This document shows, piece by piece, positions 1,077-47,223 of a DNA stretch of 64,000 nt. Made by a program: the position numbers and the translations under genes. Where the stretch lies: contig NC_069008.1 in NCBI RefSeq assembly GCF_001194135.2, positions 15,217,667-15,281,666 on the forward strand, read 5' to 3'. The notes beneath the pieces are model-generated. The model was given only the letters and a program-made list of their open reading frames with translations, did not search any database and was not told the origin of the DNA. The first letter of the stretch is position 1. Every line of letters starts with the position of its first letter. The DNA comes from Octopus bimaculoides. Taxonomy: Eukaryota.

Positions 1077-1101
1077 CGGAAGTACAATTATTGCCCATAG
1101 G
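1077..1101 (-). promoter_or_regulatory. ZNF-1 promoter: ETS site plus degenerate NRF1-type site
   Basis: CGGAAGT-acaattatt-GCCCATAGG on +; exon-1 donor GTAAGT on - at 938-933; coding-exon acceptor AG at 423-422. Confidence 0.6.
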
Positions 1102-1149
1102 TATCGTTAAATAAAACACATACGGGAGATAACTCTTGTCGCAATGTTT

Positions 1150-2670
1150 CAATTTAATGCAATTGTTTTTCCTATCTGCTCGTATTTGGGAGATTCTTTC
1201 ATTTATTCTCTGCATTTTCATAATAGCACTTCCAGGTCTCTTTCTTTTCAGAAGCACTGAGTGCAAACATGCCACTATCCTACACACATTTCTCCCCCAG
1301 AACTCAATGTTCTCTGGTACACTGCCTCACAAACCAGAACACTTTAGGCCTTCAGTCCTTGTATAATAGAACATTGGCAAACCTCTCTCTGAATCTTCCT
1401 CATCACTTAATGACTATCTTCCATACTGGCATAGGTTGAATGGTTTGACAGGACTTGGCAAACCAAAGAACTGCACCAAACTCTGTTGTCAGTTTTAGCA
1501 TTGTTTCTACAGATGGACGGCCTTCCTTAAACCAACCACTTTACAAAATGTACTGGGTATTCTTTATATGGAACAACATTTGTGCTTTCAGCATGACACC
1601 AGAATCAGTGGGTTCATCAAGTAGCTTGTAAGAAAAAACAACCCTTGGATGGGAGAGGGAATGATATCGAGGTGGCTTTGTGCTAGTTGAAAGGTTAAAG
1701 TATAACAGAGTGATAGAGATAGGTGCCATACTACGGAGGAAATAGTCAGCTACTCCAGTAGGAAAAGGGAAGACAGCAAGGAGAGAAAGACAGAAACAGA
1801 TGGTACTGGAAGTGCACCAGGAGCTACACACAGGAGATAGTGGGGGAATGTGAGCAATACTGGGGGGTGGGGGTAGAGGTGAATATTTCAAGAGGATTGA
1901 AGATGTTTAGAGATAAAGAGGAGGTGACTGTAGCAAGTGACAGTGAGAGAAGTAGCCTTGCCCCAGCCAATGGCAGGTCTGAGAGGACATGGAAAATGTA
2001 TGGGTAGGCATATGAAAGAGAGTGGCAGAGGCTGCAGCAGGTGGGGATCATGGGTGGATGAAGGGGGAATGTTGAAAAGATAGGTTGTGAGAGATTTTTG
2101 ACAGAGGGAGGGATACGGCATGGCTGTAAAGGACATACTTGTATATATGGCCACAATTTGGCTTAGATTGTGTTTTCAAGCACAATAAATCACCAGATGT
2201 CTTGGTCCCTTGTTGTCTCTTCTGTGTGGCTCAAAATCTGAAGATAATTTCTCACATCTTCCTGGGTCTACCTCATGCAAAAATTCTCTCCATAATTAGA
2301 TAGGCATTTCTTTATACAGCTGCTCTTCTCCATATGCATCACATCATCATACCAATAGTCTTCGATCTTCTACACCAAGCAGGGTCATTTTCCTAAAGGA
2401 TTGGTAATTTATTTGCTTTCCTAATTCATTAGGATTTAGGTCTTTGCTAAAATAATTATAAGGCCCTTTGACTTTAGACCTCTCTAAATTTATTAGAGAT
2501 TGTGCTATAACAAATTCATCAGCAAAGAGGAGCCTCAAAAGGCAACCGGTCTTCAATTCCTCTAATATGTCCTTGAGGATCAGGATAAACAAGAGTGGGT
2601 TGAAAACCAATCCATGGTGAACTCTTAGCTGCACACTAAATTCATTGCTGTACTCATAGCCAATTTTCAT
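1150..2670 (-). mobile_element. Degraded RTE-clade LINE fragments
   Basis: ORF 2347-2670 reads as decayed RT (VHHGLVFNPLLFILIL...LLFADEFVI, compare GVHQGSVLSPLLF...LYADD). 1150-1400 matches the RT N-terminal relic at 17400-17600. Confidence 0.65.
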
Positions 2671-2870
2671 CTCAATGACAGCCCTGCAAAATATACTTAT
2701 GCCCCATGTTTCCCCTTTGCAGTCTCTTTTGTTTTGTACTCAAGGTCATTCTTTGGTTTTCCTTTGTGATCCCTTTGTTTTGTACTGGAGGTTATTACCT
2801 ATGTACATATTTTACACCTTTTACTGTAACCCTCACAATGTAAAAGAAATAAATTATGTTATTGTTGATA

Positions 2871-2876
2871 TTTAAT
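2871..2876 (-). terminator. Candidate poly(A) signal ATTAAA in the conserved type-A 3' UTR block
   Basis: TCACTCATTAAA context conserved at 2871, 11882, 18504 and 33639. Confidence 0.4.
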
Positions 2877-3154
2877 GAGTGAAGCATTGAAAAACTAATA
2901 AACAATATACAGTAAATCATGGAAGTGACATTCAACAAAACCCACAAGCAGGGTTGCTAGGAGGAGCAGTTTCAGAATAGAGGTCCCTACATTATAGAAA
3001 AAGGAACAGAAAAAGAGCATGGCACTGCAAGATAATTTTAAAAGAAACGAAAGAAATTGAAATTATTGAAAGACCATGTTCACAATCATAATTTCCATTA
3101 CATGAATCAGGAATATTAGAAAGAAAAAAAAGTTTACAGAACAAACCACACAAA

Positions 3155-44092: not shown

Positions 44093-45217
44093 TATTTTTC
44101 TTCTTAAATCACAATGAATATTTTTTTTTTTCTTGCTTCTATTCTTTGAGTTTATTCCTTACAAATACTTCCACTGTTATATTTCTGTCCCGTGTTGCCT
44201 CATATAAATTTATGCAATTTTCGTTAGCACACAAATTCATCTTTTAGCACTCCAGTCAGAAACATATATTAATTTTGGTGATGGTTTCATTTCAGAACAA
44301 AGAGTTCAAAGGAATTCTGCCAAAGATTTATATAAACAGTGTTATATATCTCTTCTGTATAACATTTTTCTTCAGTCTTCAAAAGATGATAGATAAGGAG
44401 CATATATCTCTTGGTATCCCAAATGACATCAGATATTCTAAAATAATAAAAAAAACAACAATGTAAGTTATAGGGGTTACTTAAAAAATTCAACAATGGA
44501 AAACTTACAATGGTTTTACAGATACAAACTGTAGAAGCAAACATTTAAGATTAACAATTGAACTCATTAATTTATTCAAGTTTACAGGGGTGTGTTGAAA
44601 AGTTCCTGGGTTTAAGACAGGCATGTGCCATTAGTAATTACTCAGGGTAGGAAGTTGGTAACCTTTATGTAGTAAAAAATAAGCGAAACAGGTGCGTGAC
44701 TGAGCTGTAAGCAGATTTCTATCTGCCTTTATAGCACATAAAGAAAACGTTGTTTGTAGGAATGTACATGGCATGTGTACTACAGCAGTTCTATGCGTAG
44801 CTTAAATACCAAGATTGAAAAGCAGAGGAAAAATTATGCTTACCTCATCGACAAAAAAATAAAATATTTTGCATTTTAATAATCAGAGTAACCTTCATAA
44901 TTTTATTGAATTAGTTGCATATTTTGCCATAAAAGGAAAATGCTGCTATCGATCTATTTTATTCAAGGTAGGCAATGCCTACCTTGCCTAACTAGATGGC
45001 ACATCCCTGGTGTAAGAGTATCACGAAAGGCCTTTTATTTTTCACCACTACTGTAATTTGTATCACTAAAACGAATGAGAAAAAGCCAAGGTGCGAGAAT
45101 TACCTTTGCCTTCCTCCTCCCCTCAATTTGATTTTTTTTTGTTTTTTGCAAATCTAATTTCCCACATAATCAACAGCATCTGAGACATATAATTAGAAAA
45201 TTTTATTTAAAATTATT

Positions 45218-45787
45218 CGGTACTACTAAAGCAGCGCGGACCCGAACGCGCAGTCGCGCGTCCGCGCTAGCTAGTCTTGAGTGGTCGATCCTAACCCTAA
45301 CCCTGTCCCTATCCCTAACCCGATCTATTTTAAAACGGGGGCCACATTTTTCATTAATGTTTTACGTNNNNNNNNNNTTATCTATTTTGTGTTATAGAAC
45401 AGAAAAATATTTTTGTATTCGAATTTATTTCATGTAAAAAATTGTCTTATTTCGATAATTTCAACCAATCACTGACAAGTATTCAGTTGTTTACATTTAC
45501 TCCTTTGGCTCATTAAGCGATGTAAAGCGTATTTAATCTCCATACCTTCGTTTTATTTGCTTTTTTCATTTTAAATTTGCTTTAACCCTAGGGTTAGGGT
45601 TAATTCTACCAGTGTTCCAAGTTTCAAAGTGTTTCGTTAATGAAAAATGTGGCCCCCGTTTTAAAAAAGATCCCCCTAACCCGCGTGTGCAAATGAATAC
45701 GTGTTTAGGGTTAGGATCGACCACTCACGACTAGCTAGCGCTGACGCGCGACTGCGCGTTCGGGTCCGCGCTGCTTTAGTAGTACCG
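45218..45787. mobile_element. GC-rich hairpin MITE hosting a nested element
   Basis: Arms of about 85 bp (CGGTACTACTAAAGCAGCGCGG...CCTAACCCTAA) with 2 mismatches; AATTATT directly repeated at 45211-45217 and 45788-45794. Confidence 0.85.
45321..45673. mobile_element. GGATC-terminus MITE nested in the hairpin MITE
   Basis: TIR (G)GATCT.TTTTAAAACGGGGGCCACATTTTTCATTAA; 8-bp duplication CCCTAACC at 45313-45320 and 45674-45681. Confidence 0.8.
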
Positions 45788-45861
45788 AATTATTAATTTT
45801 TCAGAAAGTTATGAGGAAACAATTTACTAGTGGTTTGGGAACACATCAGTAATTATATCTA

Positions 45862-45985
45862 CAGGGTGTCCAGAAGGTCTGGGTACGTAGAGTAAATAAA
45901 ATCATAACATAAACAATTAAATATAAGAAATAATTTCTTAAAGTACGTGTTAATCCATATGTACCCAGACTTTGTGGACACGCTG
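45862..45985. mobile_element. 124-bp Tc1/mariner-type MITE with TA duplication
   Basis: TA|CAGGGTGTCCAGAAGGTCTGGGTAC ... GTACCCAGACTTTGTGGACACGCTG|TA. Confidence 0.75.
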
Positions 45986-46339
45986 TAGACACAAACATTC
46001 GATAAATTATAATGAAGTATTGCTTTCTGAATGTATTTCACAATATTTCTCAAATTAAAACAGACAACAAACGCGGCAACGATGGAAAGTGTAGAAGGTA
46101 GTTTCCATATTTAGAAACAGCCAAATTCCGCACAAATCAAGGATAAGATAGAAGAAAGACGTCAAAACCGAACGTCTACGGAATGAATCAATGTTTAATA
46201 CTTACGAAAATGTTTCATAAAGGATAGTGTTGTTATATATGAGTGTATCTGGTAGTCGAAAAATTCATTATAAATATTAGCAGTTGATGGACAATACTTC
46301 ACGCAAAGGACATAAACTATTCCGCAATGAAGGTCCAAG

Positions 46340-47223
46340 CGGAAGTACGTGTGGTGCGCATGCGTATTTTTTCATTTTTTTTCAGCACTTGTCTCTCGTT
46401 GATCTCTTCTATAACCTCTCTGGCAATTTTTGAGGGGATATATATATATATATATATATATATACATATATATATATATATATACACACACATATATATA
46501 TATATATATACACACACACACACGTGTGTGTATGCTAGTATTTATATTTGACTGCATTGACCATCCTATCGGATGTTATAGTTCACTCACCATGCCCCTC
46601 CATTTCTCTCTTGACAGTGCCATTCTTTGCCAATTTGGCCCAAATATTTTACCTAAATCGTGATGTCTGCATTTAATCATTCTGCGAAAGTTATGGCTTA
46701 ACTGGACATGTTTGTATGCCTATGAGAACGTAACTATATAAATGTAACAATTCATAATAGACACTAAAACATTCGCCTAAATTCGGGTTAGTTTTGAAGG
46801 TTTTTAACCACAGCAACAATTAATCCACTCATTGTGGTTCTGTTCTTTTAGGGTCATGTTTAAATCTGGTTGACTTTCTTGACGCCAACCTCTTTACTTG
46901 CCTCAAACAGCATTCAGAAATATGTATAACTGTCAAAATTCCTTCTCGTAAAAGGAAATGACAAAAAAATTGTAGTAAAGCTGCTTGGTAATAATGGCAG
47001 ACGTGGCTAGCAAATCATCATATGACCTGTTTGACAGCATTTTTATTGTTCTCTTCGGTTTTTCTGAATTCAGTGTGCACATTACGTCGTGAGCAATTTC
47101 TTTTATAACAACTATACCAGAAACTGAGTTCGTGAGAAGCGTGTTCCGATAGTTGTGAGACAAGAGTTGTCTGCCTTAAATATTTAAGAGAAAACAAACG
47201 CATGCGCATTGGACGTACTTCCT
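46340..47223. promoter_or_regulatory. Bidirectional promoter region of ZNF-9 (-) and ZNF-10 (+)
   Basis: CGGAAGT-acgtgtggt-GCGCATGCG at 46340-46364; inverted AGGAAGT-acgtccaat-GCGCATGCG at 47199-47223; donors at 46205-46200 and 47358-47363; (TA)n/(CA)n tract at 46438-46520. Confidence 0.72.

What the first reader, a model, noticed from the sequence alone, without database searches (positions are those of the whole stretch)
1077..47223. ETS-NRF1 composite promoter with an invariant 9-bp spacer
GGAAGT followed exactly 9 bp later by GCGCATGCG occurs upstream of 8 of 9 copies (10 bp in ZNF-4). The spacer sequence itself varies (acaattatt, acagttaat, gcatttaat, acgtgtggt, acgtccaat), so spacing rather than sequence appears constrained. 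The two frameshifted genes carry damaged NRF1-type sites (GCCCATAGG, GCCCATGCG), while coding copies keep the palindrome. GGAAGT as an ETS/GABP site and GCGCATGCG as an NRF1 site are established motifs; a cooperative module driving the whole family is inference.
Basis: partly seen in the sequence, partly recalled or inferred. Interest (0 to 1): 0.72.

Follow-up and report, generated by a model that had tools for sequence, protein, structure and literature searches.

The report
Shared promoter motif of octopus zinc-finger genes
Nine tandemly duplicated zinc-finger genes of Octopus bimaculoides each keep the same two short transcription-factor sites just upstream of a non-coding first exon; the sites are under selection, but their constant 9-base spacing is what common descent alone would give.

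Summary
The window is Octopus bimaculoides chromosome CM046628.1 and holds nine paralogous C2H2 zinc-finger genes plus one decayed fragment. GGAAGT-N9-GCGCATGCG is exact in 5 copies and degenerate in 3. In the ninth it has a 10-bp spacer and a mutated ETS core.

In every copy it lies antisense to the gene and 87-152 nt upstream of a conserved GTAAGT splice donor. That donor ends a non-coding exon 1, which pairs with a conserved acceptor 150-355 nt before the ATG. This is the position expected for a TATA-less proximal promoter.

The NRF1-like and ETS blocks are as conserved as the splice donor (0.92 and 0.89 against 0.94). They carry about 0.3-0.4 substitutions per site, against about 1.7 in the spacer and the adjacent flank. 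So both sites are under purifying selection.

The spacing claim does not hold up. The spacer changes sequence at the neutral rate. Its single indel matches the roughly 1.8 expected from the neighbouring interval's indel:substitution ratio. All nine copies descend from one ancestor, so the shared spacing is inherited, and cooperativity is neither shown nor excluded. No TSS data or orthologous loci could be obtained.

Verdict: an ordinary but previously undescribed ETS plus NRF1-type family promoter.

The parts
1078..1101 (-). Z1 module, degenerate: gene-sense CCTATGGGC-N9-ACTTCC
   Evidence: The Z1 gene is frameshifted.
6739..6762 (-). Z2 module, NRF1-like site damaged: CGCATGGGC-N9-ACTTCC
   Evidence: The Z2 array has frameshifts and a stop.
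10688..10711 (-). Z3 module, exact: CGCATGCGC-ATTAACTGT-ACTTCC
16454..16478 (-). Z4 module with a 10-bp spacer and a mutated ETS core (ACTTTC)
22452..22475 (-). Z5 module, exact
28088..28111 (-). Z6 module, exact; head-to-head with Z7, 392 bp between the two modules
28504..28527 (+). Z7 module: the only full 10-bp palindrome GCGCATGCGC (28503-28512), with ETS core ACTTCT (AGAAGT)
46341..46364 (-). Z8 module, exact; head-to-head with Z9
47199..47222 (+). Z9 module, exact
937..1077 (-). Z1 interval from ETS site to donor: putative non-coding exon 1 (last base 939) plus donor GT at 937-938
6598..6738 (-). Z2 putative exon 1 (last base 6600) plus donor GT
10534..10687 (-). Z3 putative exon 1 (last base 10536) plus donor GT
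16300..16453 (-). Z4 putative exon 1 (last base 16302) plus donor GT
22303..22451 (-). Z5 putative exon 1 (last base 22305) plus donor GT
27999..28087 (-). Z6 putative exon 1 (last base 28001; only 87 nt from the ETS site) plus donor GT
28528..28671 (+). Z7 putative exon 1 (last base 28669) plus donor GT
46204..46340 (-). Z8 putative exon 1 (last base 46206) plus donor GT
47223..47359 (+). Z9 putative exon 1 (last base 47357) plus donor GT
1..421 (-). Z1 exon 2: acceptor before base 421, ATG at 269; runs off the window; frameshifted after finger 1
3167..4402 (-). Z2 exon 2, pseudogene: ATG 4240, fingers in three frames, one in-frame stop
7354..8603 (-). Z3 exon 2: 161-nt 5'UTR plus an intact 362-aa ORF
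12180..14171 (-). Z4 exon 2: finger 1 lost in frame; array interrupted by gap 13033-13451 with a false duplication
18857..20113 (-). Z5 exon 2, intact ORF (ATG 19954)
24008..25703 (-). Z6 exon 2, intact 446-aa ORF
30016..31606 (+). Z7 exon 2, intact 440-aa ORF
42752..44437 (-). Z8 exon 2: acceptor TAG before base 44437; intact 446-aa ORF
48695..50442 (+). Z9 exon 2, intact 499-aa ORF

Best explanation
The 24-bp element is the conserved core of the proximal, TATA-less promoter that each copy of a tandemly duplicated C2H2 zinc-finger gene cluster inherited from one ancestral gene. The cluster lies on Octopus bimaculoides chromosome CM046628.1.

Read in gene sense, the element has three parts:
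- a near-palindromic NRF1/Ewg-type site, aCGCATGCGC, which matches 9 of 10 positions of GCGCATGCGC;
- about 7 unconstrained bases;
- an inverted class-I ETS site, GT-ACTTCC-G (CGGAAGTAC on the other strand).

Two separate sequence-specific activators are inferred to bind these blocks; the likely candidates are the octopus NRF1/Ewg and an ETS/GABP-type protein. They would recruit the transcription machinery to start within about 100 nt downstream. The transcript would begin with a short non-coding exon 1 ending at CATTTCC|GTAAGTAT. That exon is spliced across a 0.5-2.3 kb intron to the single exon that carries the rest of the 5'UTR and the whole ORF.

Shown here: the positions, the exon-intron signals, selective conservation of the two blocks, and neutral-rate evolution of the spacer. 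Inferred: the identity of the factors, the TSS, and activation. The constant 9-bp distance is best explained as inheritance from the common ancestor, not as a demonstrated constraint.
For: Source and genes. The window maps to GCA_001194135.2 CM046628.1. It holds nine C2H2 arrays, each encoded in one exon with a shared N-terminus MEKSEK.... The proteins contain C2H2 fingers only.

Gene structure. The gene-sense alignment shows a conserved donor ...CATTTCC|GTAAGTATTAAAC 87-152 nt after ACTTCC in all nine copies. A conserved polypyrimidine-YAG acceptor lies 152-355 nt before the ATG.

Conservation.
- The most conserved 9-mers in the 575-bp alignment are the donor (0.94), CGCATGCGC (0.92) and GTACTTCCG (0.89).
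- The spacer scores 0.57 and the 12-bp flanks 0.42-0.56.
- Upstream 150 bp between the two subgroups scores 0.44, against 0.405 +/- 0.018 for shuffled sequence.
- BLAST finds no Z7 promoter homology to the other copies apart from the last ~30 nt of exon 1 and the intron start.
- Fitch counts are 3-4 substitutions in 9 NRF1 columns, all in the Z1/Z2 pseudogene lineage, and 2 in 6 ETS columns. That compares with 15-17 in the spacer and 54 in the 32 adjacent columns.

CpG. The window-wide observed/expected ratio is 0.46, but it is 1.46 in the 100-bp bin on the module.

Literature.
- NRF1 binds GCGCATGCGC, and the variant aCGCATGCGC binds about 4-fold weaker (PMC10810270).
- NRF1 motifs activate only close to the TSS, and ETS motifs are promoter-enriched (bioRxiv 10.1101/2021.03.18.435942).
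- Nrf-1 and ETS motifs are ancient metazoan promoter motifs (PMC4773876).
Against: - No transcript, CAGE or accessibility evidence could be obtained. The TSS is inferred only from the donor position.
- Only one ETS site is conserved, whereas vertebrate GABP promoters usually use two.
- In 8 of 9 copies the NRF1-like site is at best 9/10 of the palindrome (6/10 in Z1, 8/10 in Z2).
- The first ~200 nt of intron 1 are more conserved between subgroups (0.70) than the promoter flanks. Other regulatory elements, or a different TSS, may therefore matter.
- All evidence comes from one 64-kb cluster of closely related paralogues. There are about three deep lineages: Z1-Z5, Z6/Z9 and Z7/Z8.
Confidence: 0.7

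Rival explanations
1. One reading: a cooperative ETS-NRF1 composite element in which the 9-bp distance (18 bp centre to centre) is itself required, through direct or DNA-mediated cooperation between the two factors.
For: Eight of nine copies keep exactly 9 bp although the central 6-7 spacer bases have diverged (identity 0.21-0.57). The one copy with 10 bp (Z4) also has a mutated ETS core and a lost first finger, so it may be decaying.
Against: - One indel over the tree matches the neutral expectation. Minimum length-change events are 5 in the adjacent 31-bp interval and 6 in the ~140-bp ETS-to-donor interval, against 1 in 9 bp (0.16, 0.04 and 0.11 per bp).
- From the spacer's own 15-17 substitutions and the neighbouring 1:9 indel:substitution ratio, about 1.8 indels are expected.
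- All instances are paralogous, so they are not independent.
- Human massively parallel assays find largely additive action with weak grammar (10.1101/2021.03.18.435942).
- Known fixed-geometry ETS composites, such as ETS-CRE and ETS-ETS, are overlapping or adjacent sites (PMC3464117).
Confidence: 0.15
2. The two blocks are conserved for a function other than being the ZNF sense promoter. Examples are the footprint of another factor (for instance one of the poly-zinc-finger proteins themselves, as autoregulation), a promoter for an upstream antisense transcript, or an enhancer or boundary element inside a longer 5'UTR.
For: The module reads antisense to the gene in all nine copies. The TSS is unmapped. 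Further conserved blocks exist on both sides: GACAAGAGTTAyCTCCC distal to the module and TTTTTGACGTGTCGATTC in intron 1.
Against: - The two-block pattern with a neutral spacer fits two short-site factors better than one long footprint.
- The sequences match two of the best-known promoter-proximal motifs.
- The position just upstream of a conserved first donor is what a sense promoter predicts.
- No Rfam family or tRNA is found anywhere in the window.
Confidence: 0.1
3. There is no selection. The motif is simply not yet decayed since recent duplication, or is kept alike by gene conversion.
For: Z1 and Z2 flanks are nearly identical. The cluster is young enough for intron patches to align at 70-83% identity.
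Against: Between subgroups the immediate flanks and the spacer interior are at or near random identity, while the blocks are at 0.92. There are 5-6 substitutions in the 15 motif columns, against about 25 expected at the flank rate of 1.7 per site. The four CpGs of the module are retained in a window with CpG observed/expected of 0.46.
Confidence: 0.03

Closest known systems
Vertebrate TATA-less promoters with NRF-1 plus NRF-2/GABP (ETS) sites, as in nuclear respiratory and housekeeping genes (own knowledge; motif behaviour from 10.1101/2021.03.18.435942 and PMC10810270)
   Same: A GCGCATGCGC-type palindrome and a CGGAAGT ETS site lie close together and close to the start of the transcript. There is no conserved TATA box. 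The sites work in either orientation. Local CpG is retained.
   Different: Here the context is AT-rich (about 35-38% GC) with only a CpG 'islet' rather than a CpG island. Only a single ETS site is conserved. The target genes are lineage-specific C2H2 zinc-finger paralogues rather than housekeeping genes. In vertebrates the spacing between the two sites is not fixed.
Fixed-geometry ETS composite elements (ETS-CRE and ETS-ETS, PMC3464117; ETS-bZIP, 10.1101/2021.03.18.435942)
   Same: An ETS site at a constant distance from a second factor's site.
   Different: In those elements the sites overlap or abut, and the constant distance recurs at many unrelated promoters. Here the sites are 9 bp apart edge to edge, and all instances are copies of one ancestor. 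Constant spacing beyond descent was tested and not found.
Per-paralogue conserved promoter elements in tandem gene families, for example the conserved sequence element in front of each clustered protocadherin variable exon (own knowledge)
   Same: Each tandem duplicate carries its own copy of a short conserved promoter element, retained while the surrounding sequence diverges.
   Different: The motif and the presumed factors differ (CTCF for protocadherins). There is no evidence here for stochastic promoter choice, and each ZNF here is a complete gene.

Membership tests
NRF1/Ewg/P3A2 binding site | Two GCGC (TGCGC) half-sites as the palindrome GCGC-AT-GCGC (PMC10810270) | tested here: met
   The full 10/10 palindrome occurs in Z7 (28503-28512). 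Z3, Z4, Z5, Z6, Z8 and Z9 have 9/10 (aCGCATGCGC), which is the variant measured about 4-fold weaker for human NRF1 (PMC10810270). Z1 and Z2 are further damaged.
NRF1/Ewg/P3A2 binding site | Bound by the NRF1 orthologue | not testable with these tools
   Needs EMSA, ChIP or a footprint with the octopus protein.
NRF1/Ewg/P3A2 binding site | TSS-proximal position (NRF1 acts only near the TSS; 10.1101/2021.03.18.435942) | tested here: inconclusive
   The site starts 111-177 nt upstream of the conserved exon-1 donor. The TSS itself is not mapped, and no transcript contigs were found for four of the proteins.
Class I ETS site | GGAA core within (A/C)CGGAAGT | tested here: met
   GGAAGT is present in 7 of 9 copies and CGGAAGT in 6 of 9. 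All six CGGAAGT occurrences in the window are at these promoters. Z4 has GAAAGT and Z7 has AGAAGT.
GABP (NRF-2) heterotetramer promoter | Two ETS sites in tandem | tested here: not met
   Only one conserved ETS block is seen in the alignment. Additional GGAA sites downstream occur sporadically and are not conserved.
Spacing-constrained composite element | Distance conserved beyond what neutral indel turnover allows | tested here: not met
   One indel event falls in the 9 bp, against about 1.8 expected from the spacer's own substitutions at the neighbouring 1:9 ratio. Per-bp length-change rates are 0.11 for the spacer and 0.04-0.16 for its neighbours. The sample is small, so a real constraint is not excluded.
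Spacing-constrained composite element | The same spacing recurs at independent, non-homologous loci | not testable with these tools
   All nine instances are paralogues. The rest of the octopus genome and other cephalopod genomes could not be reached.
Promoter followed by a non-coding first exon | Conserved 5' splice donor downstream and a matching acceptor before the coding exon | tested here: met
   The GTAAGT donor is present in 9 of 9 copies, and a polypyrimidine-YAG acceptor in 9 of 9.

The most novel reading that the evidence does not exclude
The NRF1/Ewg-N9-ETS arrangement could be a true spacing-dependent composite switch used across much of the octopus-specific C2H2 expansion, not only this cluster. 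It would tie hundreds of young zinc-finger genes to one neural or embryonic activator pair and explain their shared nervous-system expression.
Probability: 0.1. Interest if true: 0.6.

Novelty: new member of a known kind. Interest (0 to 1): 0.3.

Why it matters
Cephalopod C2H2 zinc-finger genes are one of the largest lineage-specific gene expansions known. They are expressed mainly in nervous tissue (PMC12513265), yet that study does not analyse their promoters, and the searches run here found no paper that does.

This cluster shows three things:
- Each duplicate carries its promoter along with it.
- Selection holds just two short, ancient promoter motifs in place.
- Copies that lose the NRF1-like site are the pseudogenes.

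That gives a concrete, testable handle on how new ZNF copies stay expressed, namely the candidate factors, the exon-1 junction to look for and the sites to mutate. It is not a new regulatory principle. The finding also illustrates that constant spacing among paralogues should not be read as constraint.

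Tried and rejected
1. Homologue search with a full ZNF. The list was swamped by long vertebrate poly-ZNF proteins and contained no cephalopod relatives.
2. Profile of the family-specific N-terminus plus finger 1. It gave 16 candidates and none were significant.
3. Exact look-up of four window proteins in the protein collection. None was present. Orthologous or further paralogous promoters could therefore not be fetched. The third protein search was not spent, because one search shows the family is absent from the index.
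4. The look-up of encoding contigs for five window proteins. It returned only the source chromosome and no transcript contigs, so there is no direct TSS evidence. L003 added 2.6 kb to the left of the window, which held the rest of Z1 and no further module.
5. Rfam and tRNA scans, to exclude an RNA gene or a SINE origin. Nothing was found.
6. Tests of whether the promoter and exon 1 belong to a dispersed repeat. Only the 52-bp intronic minisatellite recurs outside the cluster.
7. A TATAA box in the conserved TATAACAA, about 32 nt before the donor. This was rejected as the core promoter because it would leave an exon 1 of only a few nucleotides.
8. A ZNF143/THAP11-type reading of the spacer and the upstream block. 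This was rejected because the CCCAGAATGC core is absent.
9. Literature searches for octopus ZNF promoters and for an NRF1-ETS fixed-spacing composite. No such description was found.

Full report
**What the window is.** Exact look-ups of four window-encoded proteins place the window on Octopus bimaculoides assembly GCA_001194135.2, chromosome CM046628.1, at about 15,217,667-15,281,666. A six-frame scan for C2H2 fingers finds nine arrays:
- Z1: at or below 191, minus strand
- Z2: 3179-4080, minus
- Z3: 7378-8364, minus
- Z4: 12204-13896, minus
- Z5: 18890-19876, minus
- Z6: 24032-25270, minus
- Z7: 30362-31600, plus
- Z8: 42640-44014, minus
- Z9: 49015-50418, plus

Each ORF lies in one exon and starts with a shared N-terminus, [25 protein letters not shown]. 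Pfam sees only C2H2 fingers, with no KRAB, SCAN or BTB domain. A tenth, decayed 5' fragment lies at 36408-36875.

**The observation.** GGAAGT-N9-GCGCATGCG is exact at five places, against 0 in shuffles. Three more sites appear with 1-3 mismatches: Z1 GCCCATAGG, Z2 GCCCATGCG and Z7 AGAAGT. The ninth site (Z4) has a 10-bp spacer and also GAAAGT. Every GCGCATGCG and every CGGAAGT in the 64 kb lies at these nine places. There is one site per gene, 0.8-2.7 kb upstream of the ATG. In gene sense it reads CGCATGCGC-N9-ACTTCC. Z6/Z7 and Z8/Z9 are head-to-head pairs, and each gene in a pair has its own copy of the module.

**Assembly gaps.** None touches a module or an exon 1.
- Gap 5780-6580 starts 19 nt into Z2 intron 1.
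- Gap 11294-11338 is intergenic.
- Gap 13033-13451 lies within the Z4 array. It is flanked by 333 bp that are 100% identical (12700-13032 = 13490-13822). This is a false duplication, so Z4's integrity cannot be judged.
- Gap 26881-26890 has identical 40-mers on both sides, inside a 52-bp minisatellite.
- Gap 45368-45377 is in Z8 intron 1.

**Anatomy.** A gene-sense alignment of the nine regions shows a strongly conserved ...TATAACAAnTCTTTCCTTTATGAAACATTTCC|GTAAGTATTAAAC. This is a canonical 5' splice donor. It lies 139, 139, 152, 152, 147, 87, 142, 135 and 135 nt after ACTTCC in Z1 to Z9. An ATG in this stretch is not conserved, so the exon is non-coding. A conserved polypyrimidine tract plus YAG acceptor (TTTCTTTATTATTTCAG|AATATCATATGAC) lies 152-355 nt before each ATG. 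The introns are 0.5-2.3 kb. The module therefore sits where the proximal promoter of a gene with a short non-coding first exon is expected.

**Selection on the two blocks.**
- In the 575-bp alignment the three most conserved 9-mers are the donor (mean pairwise identity 0.94), CGCATGCGC (0.92) and GTACTTCCG (0.89).
- The spacer averages 0.57. The two bases next to ACTTCC are conserved, and the central bases score 0.21-0.46. The 12-bp flanks score 0.42-0.56.
- Between the two subgroups (Z1-Z5 against Z6-Z9), the 150 bp upstream aligns at 0.44. Shuffled sequence gives 0.405 +/- 0.018.
- BLAST finds no Z7 promoter homology to the other copies apart from the last ~30 nt of exon 1 and the intron start.
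- Parsimony counts on a neighbour-joining tree are 3-4 substitutions in the nine NRF1-like columns and 2 in the six ETS columns. All of the NRF1-like changes are in the Z1/Z2 lineage. The ETS changes are in Z4 and Z7. By comparison there are 15-17 substitutions in the spacer and 54 in the 32 adjacent columns, about 1.7 per site. At that flank rate about 25 changes would be expected in the 15 motif columns.
- The window is CpG-depleted (observed/expected 0.46), but the 100-bp bin on the module scores 1.46.

Together these results show purifying selection on two short blocks.

**Spacing.** All nine copies descend from one promoter, and there are only about three deep lineages. Two tests bear on it.
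- The first test needs no alignment. It counts the minimum number of length changes between conserved anchors. These are 5 over the 31 bp between the upstream block ACAAGAG and the NRF1-like site, 6 over the ~140 bp from ETS to donor, and 1 over the 9-bp spacer. The rates are 0.16, 0.04 and 0.11 per bp.
- The second test uses substitution counts. The spacer accumulates substitutions at the same rate as the neighbouring interval, which has an indel:substitution ratio of about 1:9. That predicts about 1.8 indels in the spacer, and 1 is seen.

The invariant spacing is therefore what descent predicts. A constraint is not excluded, because the sample is too small. The single 10-bp copy is also the one with a mutated ETS core and a lost first finger.

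**Pseudogenes.** Z1 is frameshifted after finger 1 (L003). Z2 has frameshifts and a stop. Both carry the GCCCAT lesion, but their flanks are near identical, so this is essentially one event. Perfect modules go with intact ORFs in 5 of 5 copies. Imperfect modules go with Z1, Z2 and Z4, and with one intact gene (Z7). A one-sided Fisher test gives about 0.05 if Z4 is counted as damaged and the copies are treated as independent, which they are not. This is suggestive only.

**Comparison with known systems.**
- Human NRF1 binds GCGCATGCGC as a dimer. The variant aCGCATGCGC, which is the octopus consensus, binds about 4-fold weaker (PMC10810270).
- NRF1 motifs activate only near the TSS. ETS motifs are promoter-enriched. 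Transcription factors act mostly additively with weak grammar (10.1101/2021.03.18.435942).
- Nrf-1 and ETS motifs are ancient metazoan promoter motifs (PMC4773876).
- Fixed-distance ETS composites described so far are overlapping sites that recur at many unrelated promoters (PMC3464117).
- The recent study of cephalopod C2H2 expansions does not analyse promoters (PMC12513265).

The element is therefore a new example of a well-known promoter type.

**Limits.** No transcript or accessibility data, and no orthologous or further paralogous loci, could be reached. The TSS, the identity of the factors and the generality across the roughly 1,800-member family remain inferred or untested.

Noticed in passing
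window 26717-27158, 27738-27921, 28789-29066, 47447-47548; also 52476-52575: A 52-bp minisatellite (TTTGGCTGCTATTTCTAGCTATGGAAGAGAGATGTCTATGATTTGTGCGAGA) sits in intron 1 of several ZNF copies. It also occurs once outside the cluster, so it may be part of a dispersed repeat.
   Followed up: partly
window 869-886, 22249-22266, 27941-27958, 28723-28740: A conserved CpG-containing block, TTTTTGACGTGTCGATTC (a CRE/UPRE-like TGACGTG), lies about 50-70 nt into intron 1. The first ~200 nt of intron 1 are more conserved between subgroups (0.70) than the promoter flanks, and CpG observed/expected there is 1.49.
   Followed up: partly
window 1124-1140, 6785-6801, 10734-10750, 16499-16515, 22499-22515, 47159-47175: A third conserved block, GACAAGAGTTAyCTCCC, lies 22-38 bp distal to the NRF1-like site in Z1-Z5 and Z9. 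It matches no factor I could name.
   Followed up: partly
window 36408-36875 (+): A decayed tenth ZNF fragment. It has homology to the exon-2 5'UTR and the N-terminus (IVERRNFKELSFP*DLIKEISCH...), contains stops, has no finger array after it and has no promoter module upstream.
   Followed up: yes
window 12700-13032 vs 13490-13822; 26841-26880 vs 26891-26930: Sequence on the two sides of assembly gaps 13033-13451 and 26881-26890 is identical (333 bp and at least 40 bp). These are uncollapsed overlaps, so the Z4 array is artificially lengthened.
   Followed up: yes
L002 1-5065 (window 20284-25348); L003 15773-21089 (window 2670 leftwards): The deposited gene models merge neighbouring ZNFs or start in odd places: an 827-aa model starts at the Z6 ATG, and a 625-aa model starts at window 2670. 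These are probably annotation artefacts of the tandem array and its pseudogenes.
   Followed up: no
window 28088-28527 and 46341-47222: Z6/Z7 and Z8/Z9 are head-to-head pairs. The distance matrix pairs Z6 with Z9, and the spacer sequences pair Z6 with Z9 and Z7 with Z8. This hints that one divergent pair was duplicated in inverted orientation, but the NJ trees do not recover Z7+Z8 as sisters.
   Followed up: partly
window 55575-55701 and 63789-64000; L001 17220-21500 (window ~56160-60440): Two near-perfect tandem repeats, with 40-bp and 60-bp units (98-99% matches), lie near a minus-strand gene with a DAO (FAD-dependent oxidoreductase) domain to the right of the cluster.
   Followed up: no
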